A DNA stretch of 64,000 nucleotides from Octopus sinensis (lineage: Eukaryota): positions 372,001 through 436,000 of the forward strand of contig NW_021835996.1 of NCBI RefSeq assembly GCF_006345805.1. Reading direction: 5' to 3'. This document shows positions 1-57,540 of this stretch, piece after piece. The notes beneath the pieces are model-generated. The model was not told the origin of the DNA. It did no database searches and worked only from the letters and a program-made list of their open reading frames with translations. Within the stretch, counting starts at the first letter, position 1, and every line of letters begins with the position of its first letter. Position numbers and translations under genes: made by a program.

Positions 1-1291
1 TTGTAGCTACAGATGATGTTTTTGCTCAATTCAGAGAGAAGTTACGGCTGCAAATGCAAGATGTGATTTTTGGATATTTCACTGTATTTTGCCTCAGGAG
101 GTACTCTGCATTAAATCGAAGCGGTCGTCTGGACAGTAAATTTTGTCTGTGTCAGAGGTCTAAATCACCGTTTTGATTTTAACCACGGATTATCATATCA
201 CTCCGAGGTAAGGTGTATAGATTATCGCAGTCGTTCTTGAACCTTTTTTTGACTCACCTTGGCATCTAAATAATTTTTCGCCTAACCCTTATCGATGTAA
301 AAAAATATTAAATTAATGAGATGGATGGTGTTGTTTATCAATGACTAATCTTTCTATTTCTGGATTTTTTAACAAAAGACATTCTCGAACATCATGCACA
401 ACATTCAGTCTCGGACGATTAACTGATTTCAAAATGATCAATGATGAAAGTCATTGTTCGAAGAGATATTTAGTTGGAAACAACAGCACAAAATCGATTA
501 CATAAAAAATCCAAAATCCATTAGATTCGTAAGAATTTATTAATTCGATAAATTCTTTTTGAATTTTAGAAAGTAAATCATAAACTTTTACAAAAAAGGA
601 TTGACAAAAAGTTCAAGATTTATTTCATTAATTTAACCTATATTTTTCAACTTCTTTCTTCAATTCAAGTAAATGGGAAGTTATTTAATTTTTTAAATTT
701 TCTATTTGATTCAAATTTAGATAGCAGATGTAATCATTCAACTTATCAAACATAGTAAAATTAGAATTTGTTTTATTAGCAAATGCACTGCTGATGTTTC
801 ACACCGTTTTTAACCACGAAATAATATCCATAGCTGAGATAATTATCGTTTTATTTTTAAATCTAAGAATACGAAAAGTTTTCTATCCGCGGTGCGGCCA
901 CTGGCGAATCTTAATTTCCTAATATGTATTGACTGTACATAATTAATTATCTTTCAAAAAAATACGAAAAGTTCTTTGCTGTTATAACTGATGTTGTATA
1001 TAATTAAGAAATGTAAATGATTTTATGCCAATTACATGATTGAATCGATACATCTGTACTCCGCTTAAGAATTACTCTATTCTAAGTTATGTAACTTTTA
1101 TCACATACTTGAAGACTACACTTATTCTAAAATATAAATTATTTTATATTTACGCGTAAAGCATTACTAAGAAAACAAATTAGTGAATTTAAAGATTAAA
1201 AATATAAGTGAACTTTGATAAATATAATAAATTAAACATCATCAGTTGATATGATTGTAGAACTCGTGGATGTGACCTCTGTCGAATCACA

Positions 1292-2825
<1,534 letters not shown>

Positions 2826-3329
2826 TCGTTAAAACAGAAAAAGCGTATAACAACAGTTGCTATTAAAGCTTTTCCAGTCTATTACTTATTTGAAATTCAG
2901 TCTATTTTTTACTAATAAGAGAATAATTGATTACACTATTAATAAAGATAACCGAATATTAACGATTAAACATTCTTCTTAAAAATTCCATGATAACGGC
3001 TATTTTAATCAATTAGACTCAATTAAATAATTAAGAAACAAATCTGATTTAATAATGTTCATGAAAAGAGTCTGATTTATGTAATAAAAGACGCAATTAT
3101 TCAATTAATTATTATTCAACATGTAAAGTATCAAAGTTGTTGTGGTGTGTGAATGTACGTCTCCAAACAGTTAAGGAAAACGAAGCCTATGGGCTTTCTT
3201 GCAGATAAAAATAGTTTAAAAAAGACAGGACCGTCGCCTGAAGCCACCCTATATGGGTTTGGTGATGGGGGGGCGCCTGTTGAAACCTGTTACTCTTAAA
3301 GAAGGTTCTCCTAGTCTTGTTAAAAAAAT

Positions 3330-4687
3330 TTTGGTGAACTTATGACTTTGGAAATCGTAACTTCACTTGGATGAATGCGTGTGGGAGGTCTGTACTTCAA
3401 AGAAATAAAGAATTATTGTAAACTTATAAAAGACTTCTTCGCAAACCATTACAGATGAATTCTAATAGGTGACCTTAACGCAAAACAGACCTCATATGGA
3501 TGCAATCAATCAATATAGCCGTTCCGCGAGATCGCAACCTAATGTTGAAATCTCGCACTGGCCAGCCACATAAGATCAAGATAGAGAGAGAACATGTTAT
3601 TAGGAACTAACTAATCCAAACGAAGAGAATCCAAACGAAGTGTCCCCGCTGCGTCTATTTTTCTCTTGTGCTGTGGCTGATATAGACATCCGGTTCCTCA
3701 GTGAGAATGAGGATGCGGATGCAACCTCATATGGATGCGAAAATACAATTAGGGACAATCGGATACTCCTCGGATTATCGGAGAAATGCAGCTTCAGTGT
3801 CTTGACTTCACAAGAAACAAACTATTTCTCTTATCACTGGGAAGACCGGATAGTAGTTTTCCTCGTCTTGGCTAGTGTCATTTACCAATCCAACATACCA
3901 CAGATAGAGGTAAACATCGGCAGCGATCACCTACCTCATTCTTTATGCGTGCGAAAATAGACTACGATTTGTGAAAACCACTTCATCGGGTATGATATGT
4001 CCCGGAAAAACTAATCCGACTGGATGAATCTCTAGGAAAGCTTATAAAAAGGAAGGGGAACCTTGAAAAAAAGTTAAAACGATGTTTTTGACCTTTTGGA
4101 CTGCACTTGTATTCTGGAAAAAGTTCTTATGAAAACAGAAATAAATGATTTCACAAGAAAACAAACTCCGCTTGGAAGAATTAATGCCCAAAATTGAATA
4201 AGAAAAATCCTCAATTTTGGAAGATTTTCAATCGACTCAGTCGTATGGAGAGCAAAAGGAAAAGACATCTGGCTAAATCGACTAATGGACTGCCGTCTCT
4301 CTTAAAGAGATTCCCTCATGTCTGCGGAAACAACTGGCTAAAACTCAAGATGTGGACCCGATTGATACAATTCCTAGAGAATTTGTACGTGAAGCACTAA
4401 GAAATCTCCAAGCAAACTGGAGTCGTGCGGGACTTTTGTCCCATGCCATAACGTTAGAAGAAACATATAGTGCCATTATGGACTGCAAAAATAACGCACC
4501 TGGCTATGACTACATTTCGATTACTGTCTTCAAACATGCCCCGGAAATTCTCATACGATACTTGACCGCTCTATACAATCCAAGTTGGACATTTGGATAC
4601 GTACAAAACTTTTGGAAAAAGTCAATCGTGCGTATGATTCCAAGGTCTGGCAAAAACAACACAAGTATCTATGTTCTCGCTACTTAA
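3330..4687 (+). mobile_element. Decayed APE-type LINE remnant (endonuclease + start of RT)
   Basis: IGDLNAK and NIGSDHLP endonuclease motifs; KNNAPGYDYIS...WKKSIVRMIPRSGK pre-RT segment; stops and frameshifts. Boundaries approximate. Confidence 0.8.
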
Positions 4688-6784
4688 AACGATAAATATG
4701 TATTTGAAATAAACACTTAAATAAATTAATTATCTAATTTTTATCTAGAGAGATACTTCAAAATCTAAGCATGATCAACCTTTAGAAATTCTCCTAATTA
4801 ATTTTATTTAGTCACCAAGATCACGATAGAAACTAAACAAATTAGTCACGTGATCCCGATGCATTTCACAAGCGACCTCATCCTCGCACGGTGATCTTCC
4901 CATAAGTCTACACAAGATCGCACCGAGCGGCTAATCGGTTCTGGAATTCAGATTAATCAGATATTCCATAGAAGCCAGTCTAAAACATTTGTCACTATGT
5001 GCCTAACTTTCGGTTATTCTTTACGCTCTTAGTTGAGCATCCTCGATTCTCCGCCATGTGATCAAAGATAATAGCGGATTTTCTGAAAGCTGCGAGTAAT
5101 CAACAAGTCTCTAATAAAGACCCATACATAATATCTATTAAAAAAAATTTCAAACAAATCTATTCACTCTGTGTTGTTTGAGCAGAAAGAGGAATAAGAA
5201 GGGAAGAACATTTATGGAGTGTCATCACTTGTTCACTCCGAAGACTTAATACTTAGTTAGGCAATAAATAGTTAATTAGTTTTTTTATTAATAAAGGATG
5301 AATCGGTTTAGTATAAAAATCATGTAACTTTCATCACCGTACATGATTATTTTCATTATAATTATCTTCATAAAAGCGGTCGTCTAAATAGAAATTGTGT
5401 TTCTCTATCTTACTTTGAGGTCCTTGTCTGAAGATAAATTCTGACTCTAACAATAGAAAAATTAATAAATACTAAGTGGGTTTAAATTAGGAAATATAAT
5501 TTCATGTTCTACCTATAAAATTAATAATTAATTTTCCGACTATCTGATTTGACGCATCATCCGATGATATTGGAGACTGGTAGCCTTTAAAAACAAAAAC
5601 ACAAATGAATATGGCGAATAAACACATAATTTATTATTTGATCGAAAATTTACTTAAATAATCCAATGTTCGTACTAAATTTTGTACTTTAGTTATAATT
5701 TATTGACAAATTATTGAATTCTTCAATGTCATTAGTCAATGGTTACAAAACCCAGATTACTGTTTTTATCAAATTTTAGATTTTGGAGCGAATTTCTAAA
5801 TTTTAATAATAAAATGGTATGATGTGTTTACGCACTAACTTCAAACTAGCAAAATACAAATGAATTGTAAAAATCCTAACAGATTTTAAAGTATTCAAAT
5901 TAGCAAATAATAGAGTACAAGCTAAAAAATGGTTAGGTCTTCCAAGAACCTTTCACCTAAAAATCTAACATATCAAGAATATCCTTGATGATGAGGTCTT
6001 TGATAATATTTTCTGTATTTTGGTTAAAATAAACAACGTGAATGTCCACGACTCTTATTATGAGATACATTAAAACTTTACAGGAAAAAAATTAAAGAAT
6101 TATTTTCAACATGTTAATAAAAACGACAGCAAGAATACTCCCAATAGTGTGCACCCAATTATTGGTGGCAAAGAAATTCAATTCATCCTAGGATTTTCAC
6201 TTTCAAAACAAATGCCAGCAATTAATCAACATTAAGACTATTATCATAGTCCACCTCGACAGTGTAATTAGCACATTTTAAAGTACCTATTTAAATAAAA
6301 AAACATTCATCTAAAATAAATTATTAATATGCGAGTAGGGTTAAAGGGTATCCAGTTTATACAGCGGATTCGACCAGTTTTCATGTCTGATTAGCAGATT
6401 TCAAAATACCACTTGATAGTGCAGTTAGCAGATTTTAAAGTGCAGTCAAACCTATATTGCAAGGTTTCCCAAACCTTTTCTTTCTCGACACCCCTAAAAA
6501 TCTAAACTTTATCCTCTGCACCCGTAAATAATATGTGACATGGGCAACGCGTTACGCATGGGCAACCGGTTACATTTTTTGACCTTGTAGATGTCAAAAT
6601 TAAATCCTTTGATTATCACAACTAATATTTTTTATGGGCCAATTATAAAGTTTAACTATGCCTTGTATTGATTTAAATTAGTTTTTGTTCATGTACTTAA
6701 ATAATTTTAAAAAGTTATTTTTTTAAATGTTGGTAAACCTAAACTTATTGGAAAATTTTTAGCGTGCTAGATTTGTTTCTTGTA

Positions 6785-9557
6785 ATGGCTTCATATAGAG
6801 CAGGGGTGCGCAAGTGCGGCCGAGAGTCGATGAATGTGCGGCCGTGGGCACAATTAGGTCATCGAGCAACTAATCTTAAATATAATGCTCATAGTGTTAA
6901 TTAATCAAGAAAAACCCTAATAATAATTAAAAATATTCATATTAAATAAATTCTATTTTTAATATAATGGTTAACCTTTATTAAAAGTAATTATCATAAA
7001 CGGCTTAATTTATTTATGTCATTACCTGTTAAAAGACGACGTGCTTTGAATGAAGAAAAAAGAAAATTTAATATCAACTGGGAAAGTGAATACTTCGTAG
7101 TCGAAACAGACAACAATAGCATGCAATGCTTATTGTGCCATGAGATTGTGAAAACTATAAAACGGGACAATGCTAAACAACATTTTCAAAGACATCTAGA
7201 CCACCTATTTGTCAAGTCCATATATCAATAATTTGAATATATCCTTGCAAGACCAAACAATTTGTCGAATGTATAAAAAAATTAACAATTTTATGGATAC
7301 ATGCCGCCTACTGAAGATTCACATAGAAAAAAATTAATTATTTCATTTTCAAAAAGTCAAAAATCTCATTGATGACAAAATAATTAGTTATGACGATCTT
7401 ACACCAAATACATTTAATACTATATTCGATTATATTTTGAAACAATTTGAAGAGCGATTTAACGAATTAAAAAAAATTGAACTCAAACTTCAATTAACTG
7501 CAGCACCACATACTGTTTCGATTGAGAATGCGCCATTGGAATTTCAAATTGAATTATTGAAATTAAAAAATGATTTAATTTTGCAATGATTTAATCAGCG
7601 ACAGATTATCCAAATTTACGTGAAATGGCAATAAATATTCTCGTTTTATTCGGATGCACATATTTATGTGAGTCTACATTTTCCAAAATGAAATACTTAA
7701 AAAGTCAATATAGATCTCGGATAACGGATGCAAACTTAGAGTCATGTTTGCGCATAATGATAACTACCCTACCAGTGGATTTCAATAAGCTCGCAAAAAA
7801 TACCATAGATCCTGGCCGTCATTAGAATAACTTGTATAATACATTTCTTTTAATTAATTTTCCTTCTTTCTTATCTTTTGTCCATGAAATAATTATTTAT
7901 TTTAATAATATGATGTCCCTGATGAACGAGAGCATTTCCTGTCCAAGAACTCATTCGGTCTCGATGACAATGGGCAACTTATGCGGTCACTTTTAATAAT
8001 TAAAAAAATTACTATATTAATATCGAAAAAATAATGCAGAAAATGTGCGGCCGTGGAAGAAAAGGAAAAAAACATGCTATGCGGCCGCAAACCCAAAAAG
8101 CTTGCGCACCCCTGATATAGAGGTTATGTCAAAGATTCTTCAGAGTATCGAATTTTAAAAGATGCTTTGGAAAATAAATTCCCGGAAGATTTTTCTAGGC
8201 AAGCAAAATATAGACTTATAAAAAAGATCGAGAATTTTACAATAATCAATGAAAGGTACTCTAGATTCACGATTAAAGCGCAGATTGTATCTCAAATCTG
8301 ATGATCCAAAGCTCGTCATTACTTTGGACAATGAAACTGAAATGGAGCATGTAGCTAAATCTCTACACGAATATTCACACGGAGGAGTAAACAATATTGA
8401 GTATGAGTGTCGACAAAGATACTTCATTGTTAAAAATGACATAATCAGAAAAGTCATTCGAAATTGTGAAGCATGTAAATTTGCCTGTCTATTGAAAGTT
8501 TTAATTCTTTTTAATTTTTAATGTAGGTTGGTGATATGAATCATCATATTTTTGCTTCTTCTCCGAATGAAAGGTTTCAGCTAGATCTTGTAGATCTAAA
8601 AAAGTTTTCAGTCGTAAATAATAATAACAAATGGATTTTAACAGTCATCGATGTTTATAGTAGGTTGGTAGTAGGTCTCTCAACAATTTATTCAGATTTG
8701 CTTTTGTTAGACCACTTTTTCATAAATCTTCAAAAGAAGTATGCAGCAACCTGAGATCACTTTTCTACCTTCATGGACCTTGCAAAATTTTGCAATCGGA
8801 TAATGGTTCAGAATTCAAGAATGTGTCTCTGAGAGATCTATGCGAAGAGTTCAATGTAGTTCAGATACATGGAAGACCAAACAATCCCCGTACACAAGGG
8901 ATTGTTGAGCGTTTTAATCAAACCATCACCCGAAAACTCTCCAAAATGATGGACACGGATGAAAAAAAGTGGCTGGAAATTCTCGAAAAAGCAGTGTACT
9001 GTTATAACAAGGCTGTACATTCATTTTCAAATCAGAGTCCTTTTCAAAGATATCGAGGGATAAGCGGAATAAACACTAATGTTGCAGGTTATAATTATAA
9101 AATTATGTTTTAGAAAATATTAAAAATCAATTTGAAAATTCAGAGATTTGTTCAAATTTAGACTCAATTGAAAATTCAAGTATTTTAACTTTGAATTTAT
9201 ATTTAGGCGATTCTAATTGTCCAAAAAATTTAAATTTAATTTAAATCCGATTGATGGAAACTCAGCCTACTATAAGGCAATGAATAGAAAAATGAATGTA
9301 CACAATAGTAAATACGAATTTAGTGTCGGAGATAAAGTTTAGATAAATAATTATAGATAGGTTCGAGTTAAAAAAGATTATGGAACAAACCCTTCGTTGC
9401 GGTTGGATAAATTCGAGTCTCCATTCTATCCGACGGCTGAAATAATTAACATTTTATCAAATAATCGAGTCGAGGTAAATCAATCATTTTTATTTAATAG
9501 ATAAAATATGCTAAAGGAGAGATATGGACGGTACCAATGACAAGACTAAAAAAATGA
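6785..9557 (+). pseudogene. Ginger integrase/transposase gene, 7 micro-introns, disrupted by nested hAT and one homopolymer frameshift
   Basis: Removing the hAT plus one TSD restores MASYRGYVKDSSEY. The spliced frame gives an H-x3-H/C-x2-C zinc motif, the DDE core (QLDLVD, QSDNGSEF, QGIVERFN) and a C-terminal FSVGDKVRV...TRLKK*. GT-AG introns at 8256-8283, 8498-8526, 8664-8695, 9088-9113, 9180-9206, 9337-9360 and 9475-9500; 1-nt shift in the A-run near 9222-9228. Confidence 0.85.
6801..8114 (+). mobile_element. Internally deleted Buster-type hAT transposon nested in the Ginger element
   Basis: Perfect 14-bp TIR CAGGGGTGCGCAAG; 8-bp TSD ATATAGAG (6793-6800, 8115-8122) with central TA; retains N-terminal CLLCHE..RH zinc finger and C-terminal FGCTYLCESTFSKMK dimerisation motif. 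Confidence 0.95.
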
Positions 9558-10089
9558 TTAATTTTAATTTTTTTTGTTAAAATGCATTATTCTCTAAAGT
9601 TATTCAATGATTAATAATTGACATCTACAAGGTCAAAAAATGTAACCGGTTGCCCATACGTAACGTGTTGCCCATGTCACATAATATCGATGCATGTTGT
9701 TATACATGACCATTAAAGTTTTACCATCTATTTATTTAGATACTTTTATATCACCAGAAATCATATAATGAGCGGTATCTGAAATTAATAGATAAAAATT
9801 CTCACGAACAATCTCAATCTCTCTAATGACGTTATCTATTATTTGGTAGATGATACCAGCATTGGCATGATTTTCCAGTGGAATGATTCGGACGGATTAA
9901 TAATTTTAAATGTTTCAAACATTTTTTTGATCGAATCATTATTTAATTTGTATAGCGGGATGTTTGCTTGCACAAAAACTTCCGTGATCGTTTCATTAAC
10001 CGAATCTACTTTGATTGATTCAGTTAATGCTGTTTGAACTGAATTACATGAATGATCTATAATATTATAACAAATTTATACGCATATTG

Positions 10090-10420
10090 TTATGGTCGAG
10101 CGTGGTCTTTAATACTATTCTTTGTCAGTACCAATGTGTTGTTTTGTATGGTAAGCCGAAGAAAGAGTCGATGGCCTAATTCGTCTGACGTCATTTGCGA
10201 TGGTCGTAGGACATGTCCAAAAAGCAGCCGCTTTTCCTGGACATCAAATGGGCTGTGACATTTGAATGTCCTGATCAGGACTGTGCAGATCAACTCAACC
10301 ACTTTGCTTGGCGCGAATTTTAAAAATTCTGCATTCACGTTGTCCGGTCCCGAAGCCCTATCATTTTCAGCTTGCTCAAGGCTGAAATGACTTCATAGCG
10401 GGTGATGTTTTTATTGAATC
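10090..10420 (-). mobile_element. RTE-like LINE remnant with large internal deletion
   Basis: NAEFLKFAP pre-RT segment joined almost directly to LLFGHVLR (post-RT motif). Confidence 0.55.
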
Positions 10421-10479
10421 CTCTGGGAGTTCCTTTGAATGGCTCCAGCTAGTAATTAAGATTTAGGCTGCTGATTCTT

Positions 10480-10801
10480 GGCCTTTCCCACTTTTGGAAT
10501 CTTTTATGAAATTACTGTTTCTAATCAAAAATTTTATAAAATTGACTAAGTAACTCAAAATAGTTAGTTACCCCGGCTTCTCTAGCATGTAGAAAGCCGA
10601 CTGCAATCAGGTAGGGAGAGGCAGAGATTGGGCGCTTCCAGAGATCCCGAATTCCAATAGGTGGCGACAGGTCAGGCGGTCCAGGACGGGAAAAAAGTCA
10701 TCAGGGGTGAGGAAAGCGGTATTGGAGGTACCTGTCGAGTGATTGCTCTGAAGGATGTACCGGTGGCGGGGAGAATTAAGAAGTTCGTTATTTTTAAACA
10801 T
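10480..10801 (-). CDS. Unidentified small coding-like segment
   Basis: GC-richer ORF (NSPRHRYILQSNHS...DFFPVLDRLTCRHLLEFG) followed by an intron-like GT..AG and a short terminal frame; no family recognised. Confidence 0.3.
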
Positions 10802-11134
10802 CCTGATAGCATGAGATGAGATTTAATCATGAATTAGTTTCTTGCCAGTTTTCCCATTGTTCGTTAAGAGTATTTTTGAGAGATATCTGCAATGATCGAC
10901 TAAAGTAGTAATAATATGTCTTTTGTTTTCTGAAATAGAAATTTTGTGACATGACAGGCCTAAGTCATTAAATTTTCAAATTGGCCTCAGATTTAAGTGA
11001 ATCGCAATTTTTAAAGAAAACAGTTCACTAAAATAAACGTTACATCAAGTTTTCCGTTTTTAGAAATAACAAGTTTTAAAGAGAATTAAAAGATATGAAA
11101 GAAAAGATATGAACAGAACATGATTATAAAAAAA

Positions 11135-14100
11135 TCAAGTTTTAAAAAGACGAGAAAAAATTTCGGCCAGATCAACGTTAGAATATGCGCTATGACTCAA
11201 TATATTGTCTACGCGAGAGAGAAGACGTGCATAACCACTCCGACAGATTTCCAACTGAACAGATAGATTACCTTACTCAATTATCACACGAACTCAACTG
11301 GAGTGCCGCAGGTTATTGGGAACAGTATTTATGGCCTTTTCAATGTCAAAAAGAGAACGGAAATAGTTCAGTTGGCCATACAACGTTGAGGCCGAATACT
11401 AAAAATGATAAATGCACGAGGGACAACCTCCTCAGTTAAACTAGTCTTAGAGCATTCTGGACAACGCATTTTCCCCCTCTCGACATTAATTCCACCGATT
11501 CGAGTCCGATGAAGACAGTCATCGCAAACCATCCATCCCTGATAGTGAGAACTTATAAGAAGCGTACCTCGTAGTACAACGATATATATTTCCTGGCAGA
11601 TAACACCAATTGGTTTTCGATGAAGGGAACATACGAAATTGGCGAATGTTGACACATTTCATTTGCGCATTTGCTAAGTACAACTTGCAGAGTTCTCTGG
11701 TTAGGAATAATTAAAAAAAATTACTGTTATAGGCGGTCCATCCAGCTTGAAAGGGGTGTTACAAAAAGGACAGTCCCATTTGAGTCCATTGAATTTTTGA
11801 ACGAATGACGTTGGGTTATAAACTGGAATGTTGGCATCAATTCCCAATGATTGTGCAATGTGAGCTGAGGATATTCCATGGATTGGGAGACATAAACGAG
11901 CCACTACTGGGTGTACTTGGTGGGACAAATAGTAGTCCATATCAACAGTACAAGTATCATCCAATTCAGACGGATGATATACACGTTGCGTAGGTGGTCG
12001 ATTAGTCCCATCCTAATAAGGTGATCTTCTCACTTTACATTGCAGATAATATATTCCACTGTATCTCCTGCCCGTATCGTTTTACCAGCCTGAATCCGAC
12101 GAAGAGCCACTTGTACGTGGGGGAGAGATTGTGCATAATCCTGCGGAGCTTTTGCCAATTGCTGAAAAGTGGGAAATCACAGCTTTACCTTAGTTATGAC
12201 ATATTGAGAGAGCGGATATGATGATTGGCGAACATTAAGCGCAACAGACGCAAGAAGAGAATGAATTAACTCAAGGACTAATTCTCTTGGTGAACCAGAA
12301 AGAATAAGTTCGACAACCTCACTGAAGTAAACCAAAAACAACATACTTCCCAGCCTGTCTGGCAAGAAGACACCAGTCTCGACGTACACTGTCAATTCCC
12401 CTCAAATGCTTTGTTTCAACTCCATCCTCGGCTATCTGCAGTGCTGCGTATTTTTTCTTTCGTAGAAGAAGTAATGTCTTGAAGACACCATCGATATCCA
12501 ATTCCAAATTTTTGTATAGTTTATTAACACTTGTCTTAATCTGAACATTGCTACTTATCAAAACAACCCGGCAGCCAAGTTTCAATGCTTGTTGTAAATC
12601 TCTACAGTTGCTGTTAATCATCAGCGAATCAGTATCGCCGTATACCACTTCCAACCCCATCCCTTCCACCAATTCTTTAGATCTCAACAATAACTGGAAT
12701 GGCTGAAATACCAAACCTGTCTCCCTTGGAATGTTATAAACGCCGCAAGATCTTTTGCGTAAAAACGACTGTTCGAAAATCCAAGACAACCATACATCGA
12801 GTTTGCCGTCAACTTGAGAGCTTGTTGGCGAATATTGTACTATATATCAAAGAATATACTATACTTGTGCCTTCATATCCAGGTTGCTGTTCGGTTGCTT
12901 CATTAGAGCCTTTACCTCTCTTCTACTGTCAACCAACTTTTTTATTTGTGCAGGTAATATTCCAGGAGATGACGAAAACTCAATTCCATCTCCACAGGCA
13001 ACTTTGCTGGTAAAACAGACGTTAAATTCAATTATTATGGACGGGTATAGACTGTTAAAGTCCAACAACAAGATCATTGTGTCATAAAAACCTAAAAGTC
13101 ATAGAGAAAAATGTGCCTATCTTAGGATCTAGTACAAGTCCCCCAGAATATGTCTCCTTTTCGTGCGTAGTTTTTTCAAATGCAAGGTAGCCAGCTTCGT
13201 GGAATGCATGAAGAAGCAAGTACTCATTCCTCTCTGCACGTCCACCCAAAAGCGTATGTGACTATGAAATTAAATGTCCACAAGACCATCAAATTGCCAC
13301 AAATCTGAGTAATTTGAATTGCTAAAGGAAGAATGTTGAGTTTCTCCATTACTCGCAGTCCTTGTTGGCATCCCATCAACATTGCCCCCAACAAATCGAA
13401 TATCCCTGATGAAGACTGCTCCCAAACACCCTCTCTGTATTCCTCATTGAGAACTGTTTTCACAATCTCCTCCATTTCATATGTCCTCAGCTTCAACAAT
13501 TCTTTCGAGGACACTTTAAGGTCGCACAACATCCTCCCGCCCAAAAAATTAACATCTCTAAGCCCACCATTCTACAATATTTTAATCTGTCAACCAATTT
13601 GGGCAAAGTGAAACGTCTCAGTCTCCCCACCTTGGACCAATGCTGAACTTTGTTTTTCCTAAGTCGGTTAAGAAGCACGTCCAATCCGAAACCAAGAAGA
13701 CCGTGGCCCTACACCTTCTTTGACAAATACGCACCACAATCACGTCTGGGTCAACTTTATGTATCTTTGCTAGTAATAGGCCCAACAAGGCTCTTTCACT
13801 AGCCACGACCTCCACCTTGATTGAGGAGTCCTTCCGGTTACAATACTGCTTAAAGTCCAATGGAATTGTATGATTGGAAGTACGAGTCAGCACTAGTTGT
13901 ATTAAATGAAAAGACCACGGCAAAAATGATCTGTAAACACACGTTTGTTGATCTTGTTAAGATAGAGGTTAGAATTAACTAGACAAGCCACTCCCACGAT
14001 TACGTTTTCTTTTTTATTGGGGCTGACGAACAGGTTAATGTACAAAACGGTAAGACTTGGCGGAGGCTTATTATTATCCACTGGAACGAGACATTGAGGA

Positions 14101-22100: not shown

Positions 22101-23529
22101 CATCTTTCTTCAGCTTCATTTTTCCTCCTTCGGTTATCTATTTAAAAAATTATTTTTGAATAATAAAAAATATTAGGAAAAAAGAGGCATACAGAAAATA
22201 AATTCTATCTTTACGAAAAACTTCTTTTCTTAAGGTCGTCTTCCCTCTTTCGGTTATCTATTGAAAAAATTATTTTTGAATAATAAAAAAATTTAGGAAA
22301 AGAGGCATACCGAAAATAAATTCTATCTTCACGAAAAACTTAACTAAATAGCTAATATTTTTACGCAAATTCTTCTGATTGCGCTGTCAATTGGTGGTAA
22401 ATTGTGTTAATGATTGTGCTAATGTGGTTTCAACTATCAAAGTGTTTTTCAAAATCAGTTAATTGCACACTCTATTCAAGGTCGTGCGTCAATTGGTGGT
22501 AAATTGTGTTAATGATTGTGCTAATCTGGTTTCAACTATCAAAGTGGTTTTTCAAAATCTGTTAATTGCACACTCTATTCAAAGTCGTGCAATCTGTGAT
22601 TGCACATTCTGTCAAAGTCAAATATGATAATAGCTTTAATTTTGATTCATGGTCGATAATGATATATGCATTTAAGGTACTTTTGTCGAAGTGGTCGCAG
22701 TTTTTTTAGAAGATAATTAAAATTAATTAATTTTTTTAGTGAAAAATAGATTATTTAATTTATAACCCTCTATCAATAATTTAAATGGTTATTAAAATTA
22801 TTTAAAAATTTATTTAACCAATTTAGTCATTTTTAGTACGCGGCATCCAAATTCCAGGACTGTAGAAGGAATTTATGTCTTTTACAATCTGTGCAAAACA
22901 TTCCTTATAGTTCTGTATTTGTTTTCGCCACATAAATTCTGAAAAAATAACGGTACTTTTGTCGAAGTGGTCGCAGTTTTTTTAGAAGATAATTAAAATT
23001 AATTAATTTTTTTAGTGAAAAATAGATTATTTAATTTATAACCCTCTATCAATAATTTAAATGGTTATTAAAATTATTTAAAAATTTATTTAACCAATTT
23101 AGTCATTTTTAGTACGCGGCATCCAAATTCCAGGACTGTAGAAGGAATTTATTTTGAAAGGATATCCACATTTTGCAGAAAATGCACTGCATCCTCCTTA
23201 CTTATTGGGAGCTGTCGGAATATAAATTAGTAAAAAATTTAATAATATTTTAAATTATTGATAGAGCGACTTAAATAAAATATAATATATTCCACCTCAA
23301 AAATTATTAGATTTTTTAAAAGGCCTAAAAAAACTGCGACCACTTAGAAGATAATTAAAATTAAGGCCTAAAAAAACTGCGACCACTTCGACAAAAGTAC
23401 CGCATTAATTTTAAAGAGAAAAACATAGGATGAATTGAATTTCTTTATCGCGAATAATTGGGAGTTCATCATTGTTAATATTCTCGCTGTCGTTTTCATC
23501 AGGATATTCTTAATACGTGAGATTTTTGC

Positions 23530-28639: not shown

Positions 28640-30110
28640 AAAATGCCTCGCGAAAGCCCACTGACACTCAGTGTCGATGTGGGTGGATGTGAAGAAGGCA
28701 TATGACTCGGTTGATCATGCCTACCTCGTTGAGTGTCTGCGAAGGCTCAAGTTGCCTTCGTGGTTTATCAAATTTGTTGCAACTGTGATGGACAGGTGGA
28801 ACGTGCATTTACACTATAACAAATGCGATATGGGCAAGGTCAAGCTAGAGAGGGGCATATTACAGATCGACGGTATGTCTCCGCTGCTGTTTGTCCTCTG
28901 CCTAGAACCGCTGAGTAGAGTCCAATTCGAATAAATGTCGATCGAACATGAAGGAGGGTGTTTTAGCACCAACCATCTCATCTTCATAGACGACATTAAA
29001 CTGTTCGCTCGGTCTTGAGAGATTCTCCACTCGATGGGCAAAGTCTTGGAAGGTTTCATGAAGGCCGTGGGTCTGGAGCTCAACTACAACAAGTCGGCCA
29101 CTAACTTAGTCAAAGTCTCGGAGGAGAACCAAGGGTATAAGTATCTTTGCGTGGTTGAGACCCCAGCCTCATTAATCACACCCGAAACGAGAAAGTATGT
29201 ACTGGAGGATGTGCGTAGTAGGGCAGCAATGTTATGTAAAACTCGCCTCAATGCACGGAACTTATTTCATGTCTTGAACGAGTACGCCATCTCATTGCTA
29301 AACTACTATGTTGGCCTGATCGAATTCGAGCCGAGTGAGTACGACGAAATGGACCTTATTGTCCGAAGAGTACTCCGAGAGAATCACGTCCATGTTTTGG
29401 CAAGCAATAAGGAGAGATTATACTTGACTCGCGGGCAGCTAGGACGTGGACTGAATGCATCGTACACTTAAGTGAGCGAATTCTTACTAAGATGCACGAC
29501 ACCTTGTGGAGTGGGTTAGTGTATCCCAAAGGAAGGCTGCAATCTTTGCTGCTGAAAAAGCGCGTGGTACACACATAGGGACTATAAAAGGCTAAGTGTC
29601 GGCTAAGTATGGTCTGAGTATTACTCAAGTTAATGTGAAGGAGCTGATCAAACTTCAGAGATCAACTTAAAAGTCCTTAACAAGACTCTCTTTAGCAGCC
29701 TGGACAACCCGCACATTGACGCATCGTCATCAACGTGGCTGAAATATAGGAATAACTCTCCCTGATCAGAAGGGTTGTTCTCATATTTGCAGAATAGAAA
29801 CTTTTTTAATGGTCAACGGAAAGAGTGTAACCACTGTAAAAGTAAGGCGGTGACCGTTGACATTTAGCCACGAAATGTGGGAGTATGCTTTACCATTATT
29901 ACACATGGAGGCATAAAGAGGTGGTGAGGTCCCTGCTCTACAATAAGTATGGCTTGAGGGGGGCCAGAAAGTTGCGAACCCATCGAGTTCAATTGGTGTG
30001 TGAGAACTCGAAGGTGTGCATTAAGGTGGATACCCCATACGCAAAAAAACTCGTCACTCTGATTTCTACCACAGCAAAACAAATTTTTTTGCTAAGGCGG
30101 TAGCTATATT
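28640..30110 (+). mobile_element. Decayed RLE-type (R2/NeSL-like) non-LTR retrotransposon
   Basis: VDVKKAYDSVDH, RGILQ..MSPLLFVLCLEPLSR, NHLIFIDDIKLF, CNHC..HLATKC knuckle, RHKEVVR; truncated before the endonuclease. Confidence 0.85.
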
Positions 30111-45849: not shown

Positions 45850-46660
45850 CTAAGGCCTGTGGATAAACGATGTTTGCAGTCCGTCCATCCTTGGCAAATA
45901 TAAATAAATTTCTCTTCTACCTACCCTTGAGCACCCCACATACAGCTGGCCATGTGAAAAGCACTCGTTCTCTAAAAATAAGCCTACTACCTTTAAAGAC
46001 TGTCCCTGGGCCTTGTTTATTGTCATAGCAAAACTTATCTTCAGCGGAAATTGTAGTCTCTTAAATCTATCGCAGGCCCTTTCATGGTCCATAATAACGT
46101 CGACCGATTTATATATTCTTTCTCTGCCAGGGATTTTCATTAATAAATCTAAATTTATATTAAGTACCTCATCATTAAGTGGAGCTAATATAGCTCGTTC
46201 ACGCAGCCAGTCGAAATTCACGTAGTGTTCAGATAGTTCGGAATAGACGGCATTCAATAATTCTTCTGCTGTTTCTACGAAAATACATAATTCTTCCGGT
46301 AGCCTAATTTTCTGGTCGTGCATTTCTGAAGTGATTGCCCCATTTCCAATATCTAGAAGGATTTGTGGGAATATGCTATTAACGCCTTGTAAATGTGCAT
46401 GTACATTTACATCTAAGCTTACCTTTTTCACGTGTGTCCACAAATATGACGATTTGAGGCAGGCATTCAATTCATCCGCAGGCGTCCCTCTTTGAATAAT
46501 TGGCAGCGTCTGTCTAAAATCACCTGCCAATACAACTAATGCTCCCCCAAACAAATGGTCGCTACAATTCTTGATATCTCTATATGTTCGGTCAACTGCT
46601 TGAATGCGCCTTTATGAGCCATCGTACATTCATCCCAAACAATTAACCTAGAATGCATAA
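45850..46660 (-). pseudogene. Helitron PIF1 helicase C-terminal remnant with in-frame internal deletion
   Basis: LIVWDECTMAH, FGGALVVLAGDFRQTLP, RAILAPLN, AMTINKAQGQSL, HGQLYVGCSRV; the segment between SVD and FKRLQFP that copy 1 partly retains is missing. Confidence 0.92.
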
Positions 46661-56013: not shown

Positions 56014-57540
56014 TTAAAAATCCAGATTGTCAGTGATTTCTCTTATTCGCTTGGAAGAAGAAGAGTTTGCCACAAAATTCTCTTCATTTTTCATTCCCAC
56101 GTCAAAGTAATTGTTCAGCTGAGTTTCCTCGCAGCATGCCAACCCCACAAGTTGATTGGCAGCAGCGGCGTACTCTTTTATGTCTACCTTCACTATGTGT
56201 CTTTGTTCAATGACCATACTCTCCAGCGTCCTCTTCAGCACAACCGACTGGATGTGTATAATAGTTTTTACTTTTGTTTCATAGAGGATCGACAATTGGT
56301 TTGCAAGCATATCGTATTTGTGAAATTTCTCCACTTCAACTTGCTTTAAAGTTTAAACGATCTTGCCTTTAAGAAGGTAATTCCACTTTGATCAAATTTA
56401 TTTCTTTTTTTTCTCTGGTCATAGACAAAAATGTCAGGTTTATTGAATTGGACTTTCGTCTCAGTAATTTATTTACAGCTAATTCGGTAAAGCAAAAGTT
56501 TTCTTCGAGCGTCTTTGAGTGAATCAATGTTCAGATTTTCCCAGCCAACAGCTGCATATTTGGATGCAAGAAATTCCGCGATTGTGGCCAAGTGCCATTT
56601 TTTGTTTTAATTACTCGCAGAATACAGATAGTCGATTGTTTTGGCAAATTTTTAAGAAACTGAATGAGTATTAATTCGCTTTTGAAAGAAATGAAAGCAA
56701 ATCTTCTTCCAAGCGTTTGCGATCTAAATACAACCTCTCATTATTTGCAGGCTGGAGATGTAACTTGAGAGTCTTAAGCAATCGGCGTATTTGTTGTTCA
56801 ATTTTGTCAAATTCGTGTGGTTCGATATTGATCAAGTACCGATATCCGTGGATTCCATCCACAGTCTCACAGCATGATAATGATCCCACATTAAATGCTG
56901 ATTTTTCGGAATTCATTTCTAAGCCAACACATTCAAAGAATCCATTAACAGTCTCCATCATGTTGACTATCACATCTTTTTTGAGAGGAACTATTTTCAA
57001 ATTGTCAATAAAAAAGAAATGATTTGTGGAATATGTCAACATATTGGGATTTTCCCGACTAATTTGGAGTTTAGGAAACATGAAGTTAAGCATCCTGCTT
57101 AAGGGATCCATCGCCATAACGAATAGCAACTGAAATAATGAATCTCCTTGGAGTATTCCCCGGCCTAACTTTACCTTTCAAATTCTTTTTCCATAAATAT
57201 ATAAGTTTGCTGTCCACTTCTTGGCTATGCTCTTCACAAAGTTGACGATCCAATGTGGTATTCTAGAGCAATCCAATACATGGAACAAGAAATCGTGATA
57301 ACTGAGTTAAATGCCTTCTTGACATTGACTCAAGCGGAATAGAGGGCATTTGCGTACTCCTTATTTAACCATTGGTTAATGAGGCCTGCTCTTTGGCGCC
57401 TTGAATTGCTTCCTTGATCAAAGCTGATTATCTGAGATTAAGCCAAATGCCAAATGTTGGAGTGAATGTGGGTTACAGTTAGCGAATAAAGTAACCCTGA
57501 ACGAGTATACGAGATGGTCAGTTTTGTCTTATATTCAGAG
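56014..57540 (-). mobile_element. Decayed RLE-type (R2/NeSL-like) non-LTR retrotransposon, 3' half
   Basis: GILQGDSL, LFVMAMDPLSR, NHFFFIDNLK, ANNERLYL, NKPDIFVYD (PD..D nuclease), KYDMLANQL, IQSVVLKRTLES; internal deletions. Confidence 0.85.

What the first reader, a model, noticed from the sequence alone, without database searches (positions are those of the whole stretch)
6534..9681. A bona fide DNA transposon whose integrase gene carries seven host-style micro-introns
Seen: near-identical TIRs (62/64), an intact 5-bp TSD, and an integrase frame that opens only after removing seven GT-AG introns of 24-32 nt, the same size class as the host genes. Known: Ginger/TDD elements use Gypsy-like integrases and some carry introns. 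Inference: seven introns in about 1.3 kb of coding sequence, all of host size, suggest long vertical residence, with the transposase gaining or shrinking introns under the host micro-intron spliceosome while staying mobile. Splicing could then act as a tissue- or germline-specific switch, as with the P element. The other transposases in the window are intronless. This is the most unusual object here, and the ORF track misses it.
Basis: partly seen in the sequence, partly recalled or inferred. Interest (0 to 1): 0.82.

Follow-up and report, generated by a model that had tools for sequence, protein, structure and literature searches.

The report
Dead Ginger2-like transposon with micro-introns
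This is a real cut-and-paste DNA transposon of the Ginger2/TDD type whose integrase gene is split by tiny host-sized introns, but this copy is dead and almost certainly sits in a dicyemid parasite's genome, not the octopus's.

Summary
Window 6534-9681 has 62/64 terminal inverted repeats (TGTGAC...GTCACA), a 5-bp TAATA target duplication, and a retroviral-type H2C2 + DD35E integrase gene split by seven GT-AG segments of 24-32 nt.

A 1,314-bp hAT deletion derivative with its own 8-bp duplication sits in codon 6. A frameshift in the linker still blocks the frame. This copy is therefore not autonomous.

Five introns are well supported: removing them gives gap-free colinearity with intronless homologues. 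In size and composition the seven match 12 homology-verified introns of the neighbouring Brr2 gene (median 27 nt in both).

The window comes from a contig deposited as Octopus sinensis. Its compact, micro-intron genes point to a dicyemid contaminant.

The closest relatives (46-47% identity) are intronless, TIR-bounded 1.8-kb elements in the microsporidian Dictyocoela, with the same 5-bp target. By structure and profile score the family fits Ginger2/TDD. Its placement against Polinton integrases is unresolved.

A second contig carries at least five diverged relatives. Their micro-introns lie mostly at family-specific positions, and one position is shared. This supports long residence and intron turnover. 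Splicing as a regulatory switch remains pure speculation.

The parts
6529..6533 (.). Left target-site duplication TAATA
   Evidence: The same pentamer flanks copy A2 and copy C in L001. Its reverse complement TATTA flanks the Dictyocoela muelleri element.
6534..6597 (+). Left terminal inverted repeat, TGTGAC terminus. It holds two 17-nt direct subrepeats (6539-6555 and 6557-6573, CATGGGCAAC...GTTAC) followed by a T-run.
   Evidence: The subrepeats are family D14.
6598..6784 (+). 5' non-coding region of the element (presumed promoter and 5' UTR)
   Evidence: Conserved at about 97% in copy A2. The function is inferred.
6785..6800 (+). Start of integrase exon 1 (ATG, codons 1-5 plus 1 nt: MASYR G..)
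   Evidence: The N-terminus MASYRGYVKD matches P0005 MSYKGYVKD and reads continuously in copy A2.
6801..8114 (+). Nested hAT-type internal-deletion derivative. It has perfect 14-bp TIRs CAGGGGTGCGCAAG (6801-6814 and 8101-8114). Remnants of a Spin-doc/BED zinc finger lie at 7016-7228 and of the hAT dimerisation domain at 7625-7822.
   Evidence: The insertion is absent from the otherwise colinear copy A2.
8115..8122 (.). Second copy of the 8-bp hAT target duplication ATATAGAG (the first copy is 6793-6800, inside exon 1)
8123..8255 (+). Rest of integrase exon 1
8256..8283 (+). Intron 1, 28 nt, GT-AG, phase 2, after residue 49
   Evidence: Present with GT and AG conserved in copy A2.
8284..8497 (+). 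Exon 2 (H2C2 zinc-binding region)
8498..8526 (+). Intron 2, 29 nt, GT-AG, phase 0, after residue 121
8527..8663 (+). Exon 3 (first catalytic Asp, D141)
8664..8695 (+). Intron 3, 32 nt, GT-AG, phase 2, after residue 166
   Evidence: Identical in copy A2.
8696..9087 (+). Exon 4 (D202 and E238 of the DD35E triad, rest of the catalytic core)
9088..9113 (+). Intron 4, 26 nt, GT-AG, phase 1. It is needed for the frame and lies at the start of the variable linker.
   Evidence: Present in copy A2.
9114..9179 (+). Exon 5 (linker)
   Evidence: The equivalent region of the AF2 model of P0002 has pLDDT below 50.
9180..9206 (+). Candidate intron 5, 27 nt, GT-AG, in frame and without a stop codon, so optional
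   Evidence: Host Brr2 has an analogous in-frame 27-nt intron.
9207..9336 (+). Exon 6 with an unresolved frame break. Both frames are open only in 9217-9242 (A- and T-runs). The alternative is a 47-nt GT-AG segment at 9219-9265.
9337..9360 (+). Intron 6, 24 nt, GT-AG, phase 0. The position and phase are shared with diverged families B and E.
9361..9474 (+). Exon 7 (C-terminal beta-strand domain)
9475..9500 (+). Intron 7, 26 nt, GT-AG, phase 0
9501..9557 (+). Exon 8 and stop codon TGA (9555-9557)
9618..9681 (-). Right terminal inverted repeat (2 mismatches to the left TIR), with subrepeats at 9642-9657 and 9660-9675
9682..9686 (.). Right target-site duplication TAATA

Best explanation
Window 6534-9681 is a non-autonomous, mutationally inactivated copy of a compact cut-and-paste DNA transposon. 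Without its passenger the element is about 1.83 kb. It belongs to the Ginger2/TDD kind.

Anatomy:
- 64-bp TIRs with TGTNR termini and paired subterminal repeats. I infer these repeats are integrase-binding sites.
- A sequence-specific 5-bp target, TAATA.
- A single gene for a roughly 415-aa retroviral-type integrase: N-terminal H2C2 zinc finger, DD35E core (D141, D202, E238), a disordered linker, and a small C-terminal beta domain.

The gene is split by six obligatory GT-AG micro-introns and one optional one, all 24-32 nt. They cannot be told apart from the host's own introns, so transposase can only be made from spliced mRNA. This step is inferred, not shown.

After inserting at a TAATA site, this copy took a 1.3-kb hAT deletion derivative into codon 6. 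It also carries a frame break in the linker. It could now move only if an intact relative supplied integrase in trans.

The host is most likely a dicyemid mesozoan (Dicyema, a renal parasite of Octopus sinensis) whose DNA was co-assembled into the octopus genome record.

The lineage has diversified in that genome into several families. Their micro-introns lie mostly at different positions, which implies long residence with intron gain and/or loss.
For: Ends and target:
- TIR, TSD and termini.
- The TAATA target recurs at four independent insertions, counting the D. muelleri TATTA as the same site on the other strand.

Integrase:
- Pfam rve 1.8e-16; Integrase_H2C2 at 24.9 bits, E 2.3e-5, just under the 25.5-bit cutoff.
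- D-61-D-35-E spacing.
- PDB profile hits to PFV integrase (2e-14) and Ty3 integrase.

Introns:
- Gap-free colinearity with intronless homologues across introns 1, 2, 3, 6 and 7.
- Unbiased recovery of those introns with guide P0002.
- Shuffle and other-stretch controls.
- GT and AG retained in the 93.5%-identical copy A2.
- Host Brr2 has 12 introns of 22-33 nt, median 27, AT 0.76. The element's seven have median 27, AT 0.78.

Defects:
- hAT TIRs, TSD and domain remnants.
- Empty site in A2.
- Frameshift.

The family is a true transposon:
- In D. muelleri a 450-aa intronless ORF lies between 213-nt TIRs (98% complementary) with TGTCG termini and a 5-bp TSD TATTA, about 1.8 kb in all.
- The ends of contig L004 are inverted repeats.
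- Copy C in L001 has TIRs and a TAATA TSD.

Classification:
- All 7 family members score best against a Ginger2 HMM built from the Bao et al. alignment: 155-197 bits, against 117-136 for Polinton, 103-132 for Gypsy and 100-130 for Ginger1.
- A leave-one-out control assigned 37 of 38 references correctly.

Past selection on the spliced frame:
- Substitutions between WIN and A2 fall 11/13/27 by codon position.

Host:
- The window maps to GCA_006345805.1 contig VCDQ01002078.1.
- Its Brr2 matches human BRR2 at 1,532 bits using the standard genetic code.
- Among animals, introns this short are reported only from dicyemids and myxobolids (PMC13644364).
- D. japonicum was collected from O. sinensis. 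Its genome has GC 36.7% and 49% repeats (PMC6736024). The window's GC is 29-41%.

Diversification.
Against: - No transcript evidence. The protein database holds no spliced product of this family, so splicing is inferred from comparative data only.
- I saw no intact copy of this family, so current activity is unknown.
- Phylogenetic placement is not robust. In NJ bootstraps the sister group is Polinton-only in 90/200 replicates and Ginger2-only in 77/200. Part of the HMM margin reflects the zinc finger that Polinton integrases lack.
- Metazoan Ginger2 elements make 4-bp TSDs. Only the Dictyostelium TDD-4 and TDD-5 elements make 5-bp TSDs (PMC2836005).
- Dicyemid origin rests on gene structure and host biology, not on a match to a named dicyemid sequence.
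Confidence: 0.85

Rival explanations
1. The copy is an intact, autonomous and currently mobile transposon whose ORF opens fully after splicing seven micro-introns.
For: TIRs are 97% identical, the TSD is intact, and all catalytic residues are present.
Against: A 1,314-bp hAT with its own TSD splits codon 6, and reading on from the ATG gives a short truncated peptide. A frameshift remains in the linker. Copy A2 shows the uninterrupted ancestral state.
Confidence: 0.03
2. The linker frame break is not a mutation but an eighth, longer GT-AG intron (47 nt, 9219-9265). In that case the hAT insertion is the only lesion.
For: Every open solution found by enumeration uses donor 9219 with acceptor 9265 or 9276. 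The published mean intron length in D. japonicum is 38 bp, so introns longer than 33 nt exist (PMC6736024).
Against: It lies outside the 22-33-nt range of all 12 verified host introns and all other introns of the element. Removing it deletes the residues NSA, which align with NSAYYK in D. muelleri. The overlap zone holds A- and T-runs that are prone to 1-nt indels. The region is missing from copy A2, so there is no second witness.
Confidence: 0.3
3. The family is not Ginger2/TDD. It is a separate integrase-transposon lineage closer to Polinton/Maverick integrases, or a new superfamily.
For: NJ bootstraps give Polinton-only as sister in 90/200 replicates against 77/200 for Ginger2-only. Identity of the core to either group is about equal (27% against 26% mean). 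The next-best database hits are rve + chromodomain proteins that score as Polinton.
Against: The family has the N-terminal H2C2 finger that Polinton integrases lack (PMC2836005). The element has only TIRs and one gene in 1.8 kb, with no polymerase or capsid genes. TGTNR termini, a 5-bp AT-rich TSD as in TDD-4/5, and the best HMM score by 38-60 bits all point to Ginger2. The point-estimate NJ trees nest it with Ginger2.
Confidence: 0.2
4. The GT-AG segments are not spliced introns but debris (small insertions) in a dead pseudogene.
For: There is no transcript evidence, and both copies of this family seen here are defective.
Against: Every segment begins with GT and ends with AG. All fall in the narrow host size class and match the host's GT(T/A)...(T/C)AG pattern and AT content. 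Removing them restores exact colinearity at five sites. They are inherited by a second copy. Related families carry the same kind of segment at other sites, and one site is shared. Third-position excess among substitutions indicates past selection on the spliced frame. Shuffles never allow read-through.
Confidence: 0.03
5. The element and its neighbours are true octopus nuclear DNA, or the element is a domesticated single-copy host gene.
For: The record is labelled Octopus sinensis, and NCBI annotated 'octopus' genes on these contigs.
Against: Housekeeping genes here are tightly packed. Brr2 has 12 introns of 22-33 nt, a structure reported among animals only for dicyemids and myxobolids (PMC13644364). 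The TIRs, the TSD, a non-syntenic second copy and decayed ORFs exclude domestication.
Confidence: 0.06

Closest known systems
[quoted passage not shown]
   Same: - TIR-bounded single-gene elements with TGTNR termini and an AT-rich target.
- A 5-bp TSD, as in TDD-4 and TDD-5.
- An integrase with H2C2 + DDE and no YPYY or canonical GPY/F motif.
- Best profile score of all groups tested.
- Signature IHGRPxxPxxQGxVER, as in Ginger2-1_BF.
   Different: - At most 32% identity to any reference core.
- Forms its own clade in 199/200 bootstraps.
- Much smaller than the listed Ginger2 elements: 1.8 kb against 2.8-6.7 kb.
- Metazoan Ginger2 elements make 4-bp TSDs.
- The target here is the specific pentamer TAATA, not RTATAY.
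- The gene carries 6-7 micro-introns.
- The sister relation to Ginger2 as against Polinton integrases is unresolved.
Dictyocoela (Microsporidia) 'Gag-Pol polyprotein' genes P0001, P0002 and P0003
   Same: - 46-47% identity over 99% of the protein (P0001, P0002) and the same domain order.
- The D. muelleri copy is a 1.8-kb element with TIRs, a TGT terminus, a 5-bp TSD TATTA (the reverse complement of TAATA), and two GCAAC-containing subrepeats 18 bp apart followed by a T-run.
   Different: - The ORFs are intronless.
- The TIRs are 213 nt, not 64 nt.
- The host is in a different kingdom.
- They are annotated as retroelement proteins although no RT or gag gene is present between the TIRs.
Ginger1 transposons and CACTA transposases (DNA-transposon genes with introns)
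   Same: Transposase genes interrupted by spliceosomal introns: 1-4 in Ginger1 (PMC2836005) and 1-6 exons in CACTA, with intron positions differing between families (PMC4158355).
   Different: Ginger1 has CCGG/CCGT 4-bp TSDs and YPYY and GPY/F motifs, and scores lower here. CACTA belongs to an unrelated DDE superfamily. Neither has introns of 22-33 nt at this density (about 5-6 per kb of CDS).
Polinton/Maverick integrases
   Same: The DDE core is about as similar to these as to Ginger2. Tier-2 database hits are rve + chromodomain proteins that score as Polinton.
   Different: - Polintons are 15-20-kb self-synthesising elements.
- They make 6-bp TSDs.
- Their integrases have no N-terminal zinc finger (PMC2836005, PMC6839031).
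- None of their other genes is present here.
hAT superfamily (for the nested insert)
   Same: An 8-bp TSD, short TIRs beginning CAGGGGTG, and remnants of a BED/Spin-doc zinc finger and the hAT dimerisation domain. Its TIR resembles that of the 557-aa hAT at 49621-51294.
   Different: It is an internally deleted, non-coding derivative. It belongs to a different family from the full-length hAT in the window.

Membership tests
Ginger2/TDD | Terminal inverted repeats of roughly 50-300 bp flanking a single transposase gene | tested here: met
   64-bp TIRs at 62/64. The relative in D. muelleri has 213-nt TIRs.
Ginger2/TDD | Termini follow TGTNR ... YNACA | tested here: met
   TGTGA...TCACA. D. muelleri has TGTCG. 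Copy C has TGTCA.
Ginger2/TDD | Short AT-rich TSD: 4 bp in metazoan Ginger2, 5 bp in TDD-4/5 | tested here: met
   5-bp TAATA, seen at 4 independent insertions. The length matches TDD-4/5, not the metazoan 4 bp (PMC2836005).
Ginger2/TDD | Transposase with an N-terminal H2C2 zinc finger plus a DDE integrase core | tested here: met
   Pfam rve 1.8e-16; Integrase_H2C2 at 24.9 bits, just under the 25.5-bit cutoff. An H..H..C..C motif and D141/D202/E238 with 35-residue D-E spacing.
Ginger2/TDD | Lacks the YPYY and GPY/F motifs of Ginger1/Gypsy integrases | tested here: met
   By inspection of the alignment. There is no YPYY upstream of the finger. At the GPY/F position the C-terminal domain has KF[ED]SxF/Y, with G-P not conserved.
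Ginger2/TDD | Phylogenetic grouping with TDD-4/5 and Ginger2 integrases | tested here: inconclusive
   Best HMM score is to Ginger2 for 7 of 7 members, and the point-estimate NJ trees nest it with Ginger2. An exclusive family + Ginger2 clade appears in only 13/200 bootstraps, and the sister is Polinton-only in 90/200.
Ginger1 | CCGG/CCGT-specific 4-bp TSD; YPYY and GPY/F motifs; about 400 aa highly similar to Gypsy integrase | tested here: not met
   The TSD is TAATA. The motifs are absent. The Ginger1 HMM scores 100-130 bits against 155-197 for Ginger2.
Polinton/Maverick | Large element with protein-primed DNA polymerase and capsid genes; 6-bp TSD; integrase without an N-terminal zinc finger | tested here: not met
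   A 1.8-kb element with a single gene, a 5-bp TSD, and a zinc finger present.
GingerRoot | 6-bp (rarely 7-8) GC-rich TSD, 100-150-bp TIRs, mostly TA...TA termini (PMC6839031) | tested here: not met
   A 5-bp AT-only TSD, 64-bp TIRs and TG...CA termini. No GingerRoot sequences were available for a sequence comparison.
LTR retrotransposon (Gypsy) fragment | Integrase as part of a pol gene with RT/RNase H, flanked by direct LTRs | tested here: not met
   The repeats are inverted and directly flank the integrase gene. There is no RT or RNase H between them. Introns are retained, which is not expected after passage through spliced RNA.
Spliceosomal (U2-type) introns of the host | GT-AG boundaries, host size class and composition, and removal restores the coding frame | tested here: met
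Spliceosomal (U2-type) introns of the host | Actually removed from the transcript | not testable with these tools
   No RNA-seq access. No spliced product of this family appears in the protein database.
hAT (nested insert 6801-8114) | 8-bp TSD, short TIRs, BED-type zinc finger and C-terminal hAT dimerisation domain | tested here: met
   TSD ATATAGAG and 14-bp TIRs. zf-C2H2_12 at 8.4e-8. Dimer_Tnp_hAT at 4.4e-4, 20.4 bits against a 21.4-bit cutoff. The catalytic middle is deleted.

The most novel reading that the evidence does not exclude
The integrase genes of these elements record de novo creation of minimal (22-33 nt) spliceosomal introns.

For:
- Every non-dicyemid relative is intronless.
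- The dicyemid families carry micro-introns at mostly family-specific positions. In WIN numbering these are residues 44, 49, 121, 146, 157, 166, 279 and 400.
- Only one position (362) is shared by the sister families WIN, B and E.

If these are gains and not differential losses, transposon genes in this genome are a rare, datable series of recent intron births. They would have arisen in a lineage whose host-gene introns are thought to be ancestral ones that merely shrank.

A corollary is that the dicyemid-microsporidian distribution reflects old horizontal spread between parasites of marine invertebrates.
Probability: 0.4. Interest if true: 0.7.

Novelty: new member of a known kind. Interest (0 to 1): 0.5.

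Why it matters
1. It adds a distinct, compact lineage to the integrase-encoding Ginger2/TDD DNA transposons. The lineage has a 5-bp TSD and a TAATA-specific target, and it is shared by a dicyemid and by microsporidia. It also shows that the Dictyocoela 'Gag-Pol' annotations are really DNA transposons.
2. It shows that transposon genes in the animal lineage with nearly the shortest known introns have the same dense micro-intron structure as host genes, and that intron positions differ between co-resident families. This gives a tractable system for asking how very short introns arise or are lost, and whether a transposon must adapt its gene structure to its host's spliceosome.
3. There is a practical point. 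At least two contigs of about 0.5 Mb in the public Octopus sinensis assembly look like dicyemid DNA. NCBI's pipeline built chimeric 'octopus' gene models on them, for example a 'ZBED5-like' protein that contains an integrase exon.
4. The element itself is a dead copy, and introns in transposase genes have precedents. The finding is interesting but not extraordinary.

Tried and rejected
- The 40-nt TIR (up to 3 mismatches) and the hAT TIR have no further copies in the window.
- A homologue search with a Brr2 exon returned only short exon-sized fragments and no named dicyemid protein. It could not name the host directly. It still served to verify three host introns.
- A shortest-path intron finder without homology mis-called several host introns (16, 20, 53 and 110 nt). 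These were replaced by calls guided by human BRR2.
The intronless homologue P0002 was modelled instead.
- The first HMM scoring failed because gapped sequences had been read in. It was repeated correctly.
- The D. muelleri locus L006 (P0003) showed no recognisable TIRs.
- P0015's contig L007 looks like a polinton-like virus or element, but I did not characterise it.
- Literature searches found no report of Ginger elements in dicyemids or microsporidia, and none of dicyemid contamination of the octopus assembly.
- Other WWTWTGTGAC sites in the window (10941, 16046, 49366, 55108) do not show the TIR architecture.
- I considered a ciliate or apicomplexan host and rejected it. The genes use the standard genetic code, and Brr2 is very similar to human BRR2.

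Full report
**1. What is at 6534-9681**

The outermost feature is an inverted repeat.
- Positions 6534-6597 pair with 9618-9681 at 62 of 64 positions. Weaker, gapped similarity continues for about 20 nt further.
- The ends read TGTGAC...GTCACA.
- The five bases outside each end are TAATA (6529-6533 and 9682-9686).
- A 40-nt TIR probe finds only these two sites in the window, against zero expected.
- Each TIR contains two 17-nt direct subrepeats (CATGGGCAAC..GTTAC) spaced 18 nt apart and followed by a T-run (families D14 and D17).

**2.

Inside the element, 6801-8114 is bounded by perfect 14-bp inverted repeats CAGGGGTGCGCAAG. It is flanked by a direct 8-bp duplication ATATAGAG (6793-6800 and 8115-8122).
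- Its ORF remnants hit a Spin-doc/BED-type zinc finger at 8.4e-8. They also hit the hAT dimerisation domain at 4.4e-4, just under Pfam's cutoff.
- It is therefore an internally deleted hAT.
- Removing it together with one TSD copy joins ATG GCT TCA TAT AGA G|GT TAT GTC, giving MASYRGYVKD. This N-terminus matches the homologue P0005, MSYKGYVKD.
- The hAT therefore sits in codon 6 of the integrase gene.
- A second copy of the element on another contig of the same assembly (L001 10422-11694, about 93.5% identical, called A2 here) runs straight through the site without the hAT. This proves the insertion is secondary.
- Without the passenger the element is 1,826 bp.

**3. The integrase gene and its introns**

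With the hAT removed, the reading frame is restored by taking out GT-AG segments at these positions.

| Intron | Coordinates | Length (nt) | Phase |
|---|---|---|---|
| 1 | 8256-8283 | 28 | 2 |
| 2 | 8498-8526 | 29 | 0 |
| 3 | 8664-8695 | 32 | 2 |
| 4 | 9088-9113 | 26 | 1 |
| 5 | 9180-9206 | 27 | 1 |
| 6 | 9337-9360 | 24 | 0 |
| 7 | 9475-9500 | 26 | 0 |

The product has these features:
- rve at 1.8e-16. Integrase_H2C2 scores 24.9 bits, E 2.3e-5, just under its 25.5-bit cutoff.
- An H-H-C-C motif, and D141, D202 and E238 with D-35-E spacing.
- A family profile matches PFV integrase (2e-14) and Ty3 integrase across positions 41-374.

Evidence that the segments are real introns:
- In an alignment with five intronless homologues there is no gap at introns 1, 2, 3, 6 or 7.
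- A protein-to-genome dynamic programme that I wrote was guided only by the intronless D. muelleri protein. It recovers exactly these five introns, with the same coordinates and phases.
- The real sequence can be read through with 4 + 2 obligatory 24-32-nt GT-AG removals. None of 40 shuffles, the reverse strand or six other window stretches can be read through at all.
- Copy A2 keeps introns 1, 3 and 4 with GT and AG intact.
- Substitutions between the two copies fall 11/13/27 on codon positions 1/2/3. Part of their divergence therefore accrued under selection on the spliced frame.

Introns 4 and 5 lie in a variable linker. In an AlphaFold model of the homologue P0002 this linker is disordered, with pLDDT below 50 at residues 292-385.
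- Intron 4 is needed for the frame.
- Intron 5 is in frame and has no stop codon, so it is optional.

**4. The frame does not fully open**

After the seven removals the frame still breaks between 9207 and 9336.
- Exhaustive enumeration of one to three GT-AG segments of 15-79 nt finds open solutions only with a 47-nt (9219-9265) or 58-nt (9219-9276) segment.
- The two frames overlap as open frames only in 9217-9242, a stretch of A- and T-runs.
- The downstream frame reads NSAYYKAMNRKM, which matches NSAYYKRMDKKM in D. muelleri. The 47-nt option would delete NSA.
- I favour a 1-nt indel (about 0.65) over an eighth, atypically long intron (about 0.3).
- Copy A2 is truncated at the equivalent of window 9187, so it cannot arbitrate.

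Either way this copy is non-autonomous because of the hAT.

**5. Host introns**

The neighbouring Brr2 gene (about 33.4-40.7 kb, + strand) was used as a yardstick.
- Exon fragments from a homologue search verified three introns.
- A residue-level alignment to human BRR2 (1,532 bits), followed by guided enumeration, extended this to 12 introns.
- Their lengths are 27, 24, 28, 26, 29, 24, 27, 28, 25, 22, 33 and 28 nt. The median is 27, AT content is 0.76, and the boundaries read GT(T/A)...(T/C)AG.
- The element's seven have median 27, AT 0.78, and the same boundary pattern.
- Brr2 also has an in-frame, stop-free 27-nt intron, a parallel to the element's intron 5.

**6. Whose genome is this?**

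An exact-protein look-up places the window on NCBI GCA_006345805.1 (Octopus sinensis), contig VCDQ01002078.1, at about 372,001-436,000.

The window does not look like octopus DNA.
- It packs kinesin-light-chain-like, DNA-polymerase, GPN-GTPase, Brr2, NSUN-like and ProRS genes, plus several transposons, into 64 kb.
- Its introns are 22-33 nt.

The literature points to a dicyemid.
- Among animals, introns this short are reported only for the dicyemid Dicyema japonicum and for myxobolid myxozoans (PMC13644364).
- D. japonicum lives in the renal sac of O. sinensis. Its genome has GC 36.7%, 49% repeats and a mean intron length of 38 bp. Its authors could not fully separate parasite from host cells (PMC6736024).
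- The standard genetic code and the very high similarity of Brr2 to human BRR2 argue for a metazoan, not a ciliate or apicomplexan parasite.

I infer, at about 0.85-0.9 confidence, that this contig and VCDQ01002209.1 are dicyemid contaminants. This is an inference, because no named dicyemid sequence was available to match.

**7. Relatives elsewhere**

The best database hits are 'Gag-Pol polyprotein' of the microsporidia Dictyocoela roeselum and D. muelleri (458 and 450 aa), at 46-47% identity over 99% of the query.
- Three environmental proteins follow: P0005, P0004 and P0162.
- All are uninterrupted ORFs.

The D. muelleri gene lies between 213-nt inverted repeats that are 98% complementary.
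- The ends read TGTCG...CGACA.
- The flanking TSD is TATTA, the reverse complement of TAATA.
- The element is about 1.8 kb.
- Its TIR shares the architecture seen here: two GCAAC-containing motifs 18 bp apart and then a T-run (sequences).

Contig L004 (P0005) also ends in inverted repeats.

The family is therefore a genuine TIR transposon across very distant hosts. The 'Gag-Pol' label is an annotation artefact.

**8. Classification**

I transcribed 38 aligned integrase rows from Additional file 1 of Bao et al. 2010: Ginger2/TDD, Polinton, Ginger1, Gypsy, Copia and BEL. I did not transcribe the retroviral rows of that file.

| Group HMM | Score of the 7 family members (bits) |
|---|---|
| Ginger2 | 155-197 |
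| Polinton | 117-136 |
| Gypsy | 103-132 |
| Ginger1 | 100-130 |

- All seven members score best against Ginger2.
- A leave-one-out control assigns 37 of 38 references correctly.
- The rve + chromodomain proteins that form the next tier of database hits score as Polinton, at 195-211 bits.
- NJ trees nest the family with Ginger2.
- Bootstraps support only the family itself (199/200) and WIN + Dictyocoela (200/200).
- The immediate sister is Polinton-only in 90/200 replicates and Ginger2-only in 77/200.

By its defining structural features the element meets Ginger2/TDD: TIRs, TGTNR ends, a short AT-rich TSD of 5 bp as in TDD-4/5, H2C2 + DDE, and no YPYY or GPY/F motif. The phylogenetic criterion is inconclusive. 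It fails the tests for Ginger1, Polinton, GingerRoot and LTR elements (see the membership table).

**9. More families in the same genome, with different introns**

tblastn shows at least five further, diverged integrase copies in the 24.6 kb of L001. The validated protein-to-genome alignment gives the following. Residue numbers are WIN numbering.

| Copy | Location in L001 | Introns found | Absent or other notes |
|---|---|---|---|
| B | about 2690-1470, minus strand | 29 nt phase 2 after residue 146; 26 nt phase 1 after about 279; 27 nt phase 0 after 362 | The residue-362 intron has the same position and phase as intron 6 here. None at the sites of introns 1, 2 or 3. |
| C | 33-1295 | 33 nt after residue 157 | Has TIRs and TAATA on both sides. 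|
| D | about 3760-2917, minus strand | 26 nt after residue 157 | None at the intron-3 site. |
| E | about 6257-5557, minus strand | 22 nt after residue 44; 26 nt after residue 362 | An internal-deletion derivative. |
| F | about 22307-22969 | Only a doubtful 46-nt candidate | More distant. |

All of these copies carry stops or frameshifts.

In a tree of the conceptual proteins:
- WIN + A2 + B form a clade in 184/200 bootstraps.
- That clade is sister to the Dictyocoela/JGI group, and together they form a clade in 197/200.
- C + D + F form a second dicyemid lineage in 186/200.

Micro-introns in integrase genes are therefore general in this genome.
- One intron predates the WIN/B split. WIN and B are 55% identical over the trimmed alignment columns.
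- The other introns are lineage-specific.
- The data cannot separate repeated gain from differential loss. The intronless outgroups include microsporidia, which are intron-poor. In plant CACTA transposases loss was inferred to dominate (PMC4158355).
- Both scenarios imply long residence and intron turnover.

**10. Mechanism**

Shown:
- The anatomy of a TIR/TSD element.
- A complete catalytic triad.
- Comparative proof of the introns.
- The lesions in this copy.
- The recurrence of the TAATA target.

Inferred from knowledge of retroviral-type DDE integrases and Ginger elements (PMC2836005):
- The integrase binds the paired subterminal repeats, cleaves at the conserved CA-3' ends, and joins them to staggered positions 5 bp apart in TAATA.
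- Expression requires the host spliceosome to remove all obligatory micro-introns.
- Because the element moves as DNA, the introns travel with it.

Not supported by any data here: regulation by stage-specific splicing.

**11. Surroundings**

Joining the flanks shows that the element landed in old transposon debris. Hypothetical ORFs resembling hAT/ZBED and LINE reverse-transcriptase fragments lie on the minus strand at about 9.7-10.4 kb. I identified these by eye only.

It has a frameshift just before its dimerisation domain, and a TIR related to that of the nested hAT.

**12. Verdict**

This is a real and well-characterisable object: a dead copy of a new, compact Ginger2/TDD-like family with host-type micro-introns, in what is almost certainly dicyemid DNA filed under an octopus name.
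- It is a new member of a known kind.
- Introns in transposase genes, and variation of intron position between families, both have precedents.
- The extreme intron size and density, the cross-kingdom relatives and the family-specific intron positions make it moderately interesting (0.5).
- The most novel admissible reading is recent birth of minimal introns, at about 0.4 probability.

Noticed in passing
whole window (= GCA_006345805.1 contig VCDQ01002078.1, about 372001-436000) and L001 (contig VCDQ01002209.1): Contigs deposited as Octopus sinensis carry tightly packed housekeeping genes with 22-33-nt introns. They are most likely dicyemid (Dicyema) contamination of the octopus assembly, amounting to at least two contigs of about 0.5 Mb.
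   Followed up: partly
L001 10001-14629 (protein P0034): NCBI's 'zinc finger BED domain-containing protein 5-like [Octopus sinensis]' is a chimeric gene model. It splices hAT-derived exons to one exon of the integrase (VGDMNHHIFASSPNERFQLDLVDLKKFSV).
   Followed up: partly
L001 1-6400 and 22000-23500: A cluster of at least five diverged Ginger2-like integrase copies (B-F), nested or adjacent. All are pseudogenised. Their micro-introns lie at family-specific positions. Copy C (33-1295) has TIRs and a TAATA TSD.
   Followed up: yes
L002 4756-6571 (Dictyocoela muelleri SDVU01000034.1); L005; L006: Microsporidian genes annotated 'Gag-Pol polyprotein' are intronless integrases of TIR-bounded 1.8-kb DNA transposons (213-nt TIRs, TSD TATTA), not retroelement genes.
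   Followed up: yes
window 49621-51294, with its right end near 51590: A near-full-length hAT (557-aa ORF) has a frameshift just upstream of its dimerisation domain. Its right TIR, read on the reverse strand (CAGGGGTCACCAAAC...), resembles that of the nested hAT (CAGGGGTGCGCAAGC...).
   Followed up: partly
window 35559-35585: Host Brr2 contains an in-frame, stop-free 27-nt intron. If retained it would add nine residues (LFYFYHYD..). ORF-based annotation would read through it.
   Followed up: partly
window 9690-10400, minus strand: The element inserted into older transposon debris. Hypothetical ORFs there resemble hAT/ZBED transposase and LINE reverse-transcriptase fragments, judged by eye only.
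   Followed up: no
L007 (ENA ERZ12293637 scaffold_16303_c1), 831-11465: The rve + chromodomain integrase P0015 sits at the end of a 13.5-kb contig of co-oriented small genes plus a 1,449-aa protein. It looks like a polinton-like virus or element, and the integrase scores as Polinton by HMM.
   Followed up: no
window 45850-46554 (-), 29034-29471 (+), 56671-57129 (-): There is a Pif1/Helitron-like helicase ORF and two reverse-transcriptase fragments. The window is transposon-rich, in line with the 49% repeats reported for D. japonicum.
   Followed up: no
L001 about 11695-11780: Copy A2 is truncated inside intron 5. It abuts sequence encoding another integrase motif (RGRPHAPRIQEQVERF), which suggests a further nested integrase element.
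   Followed up: no
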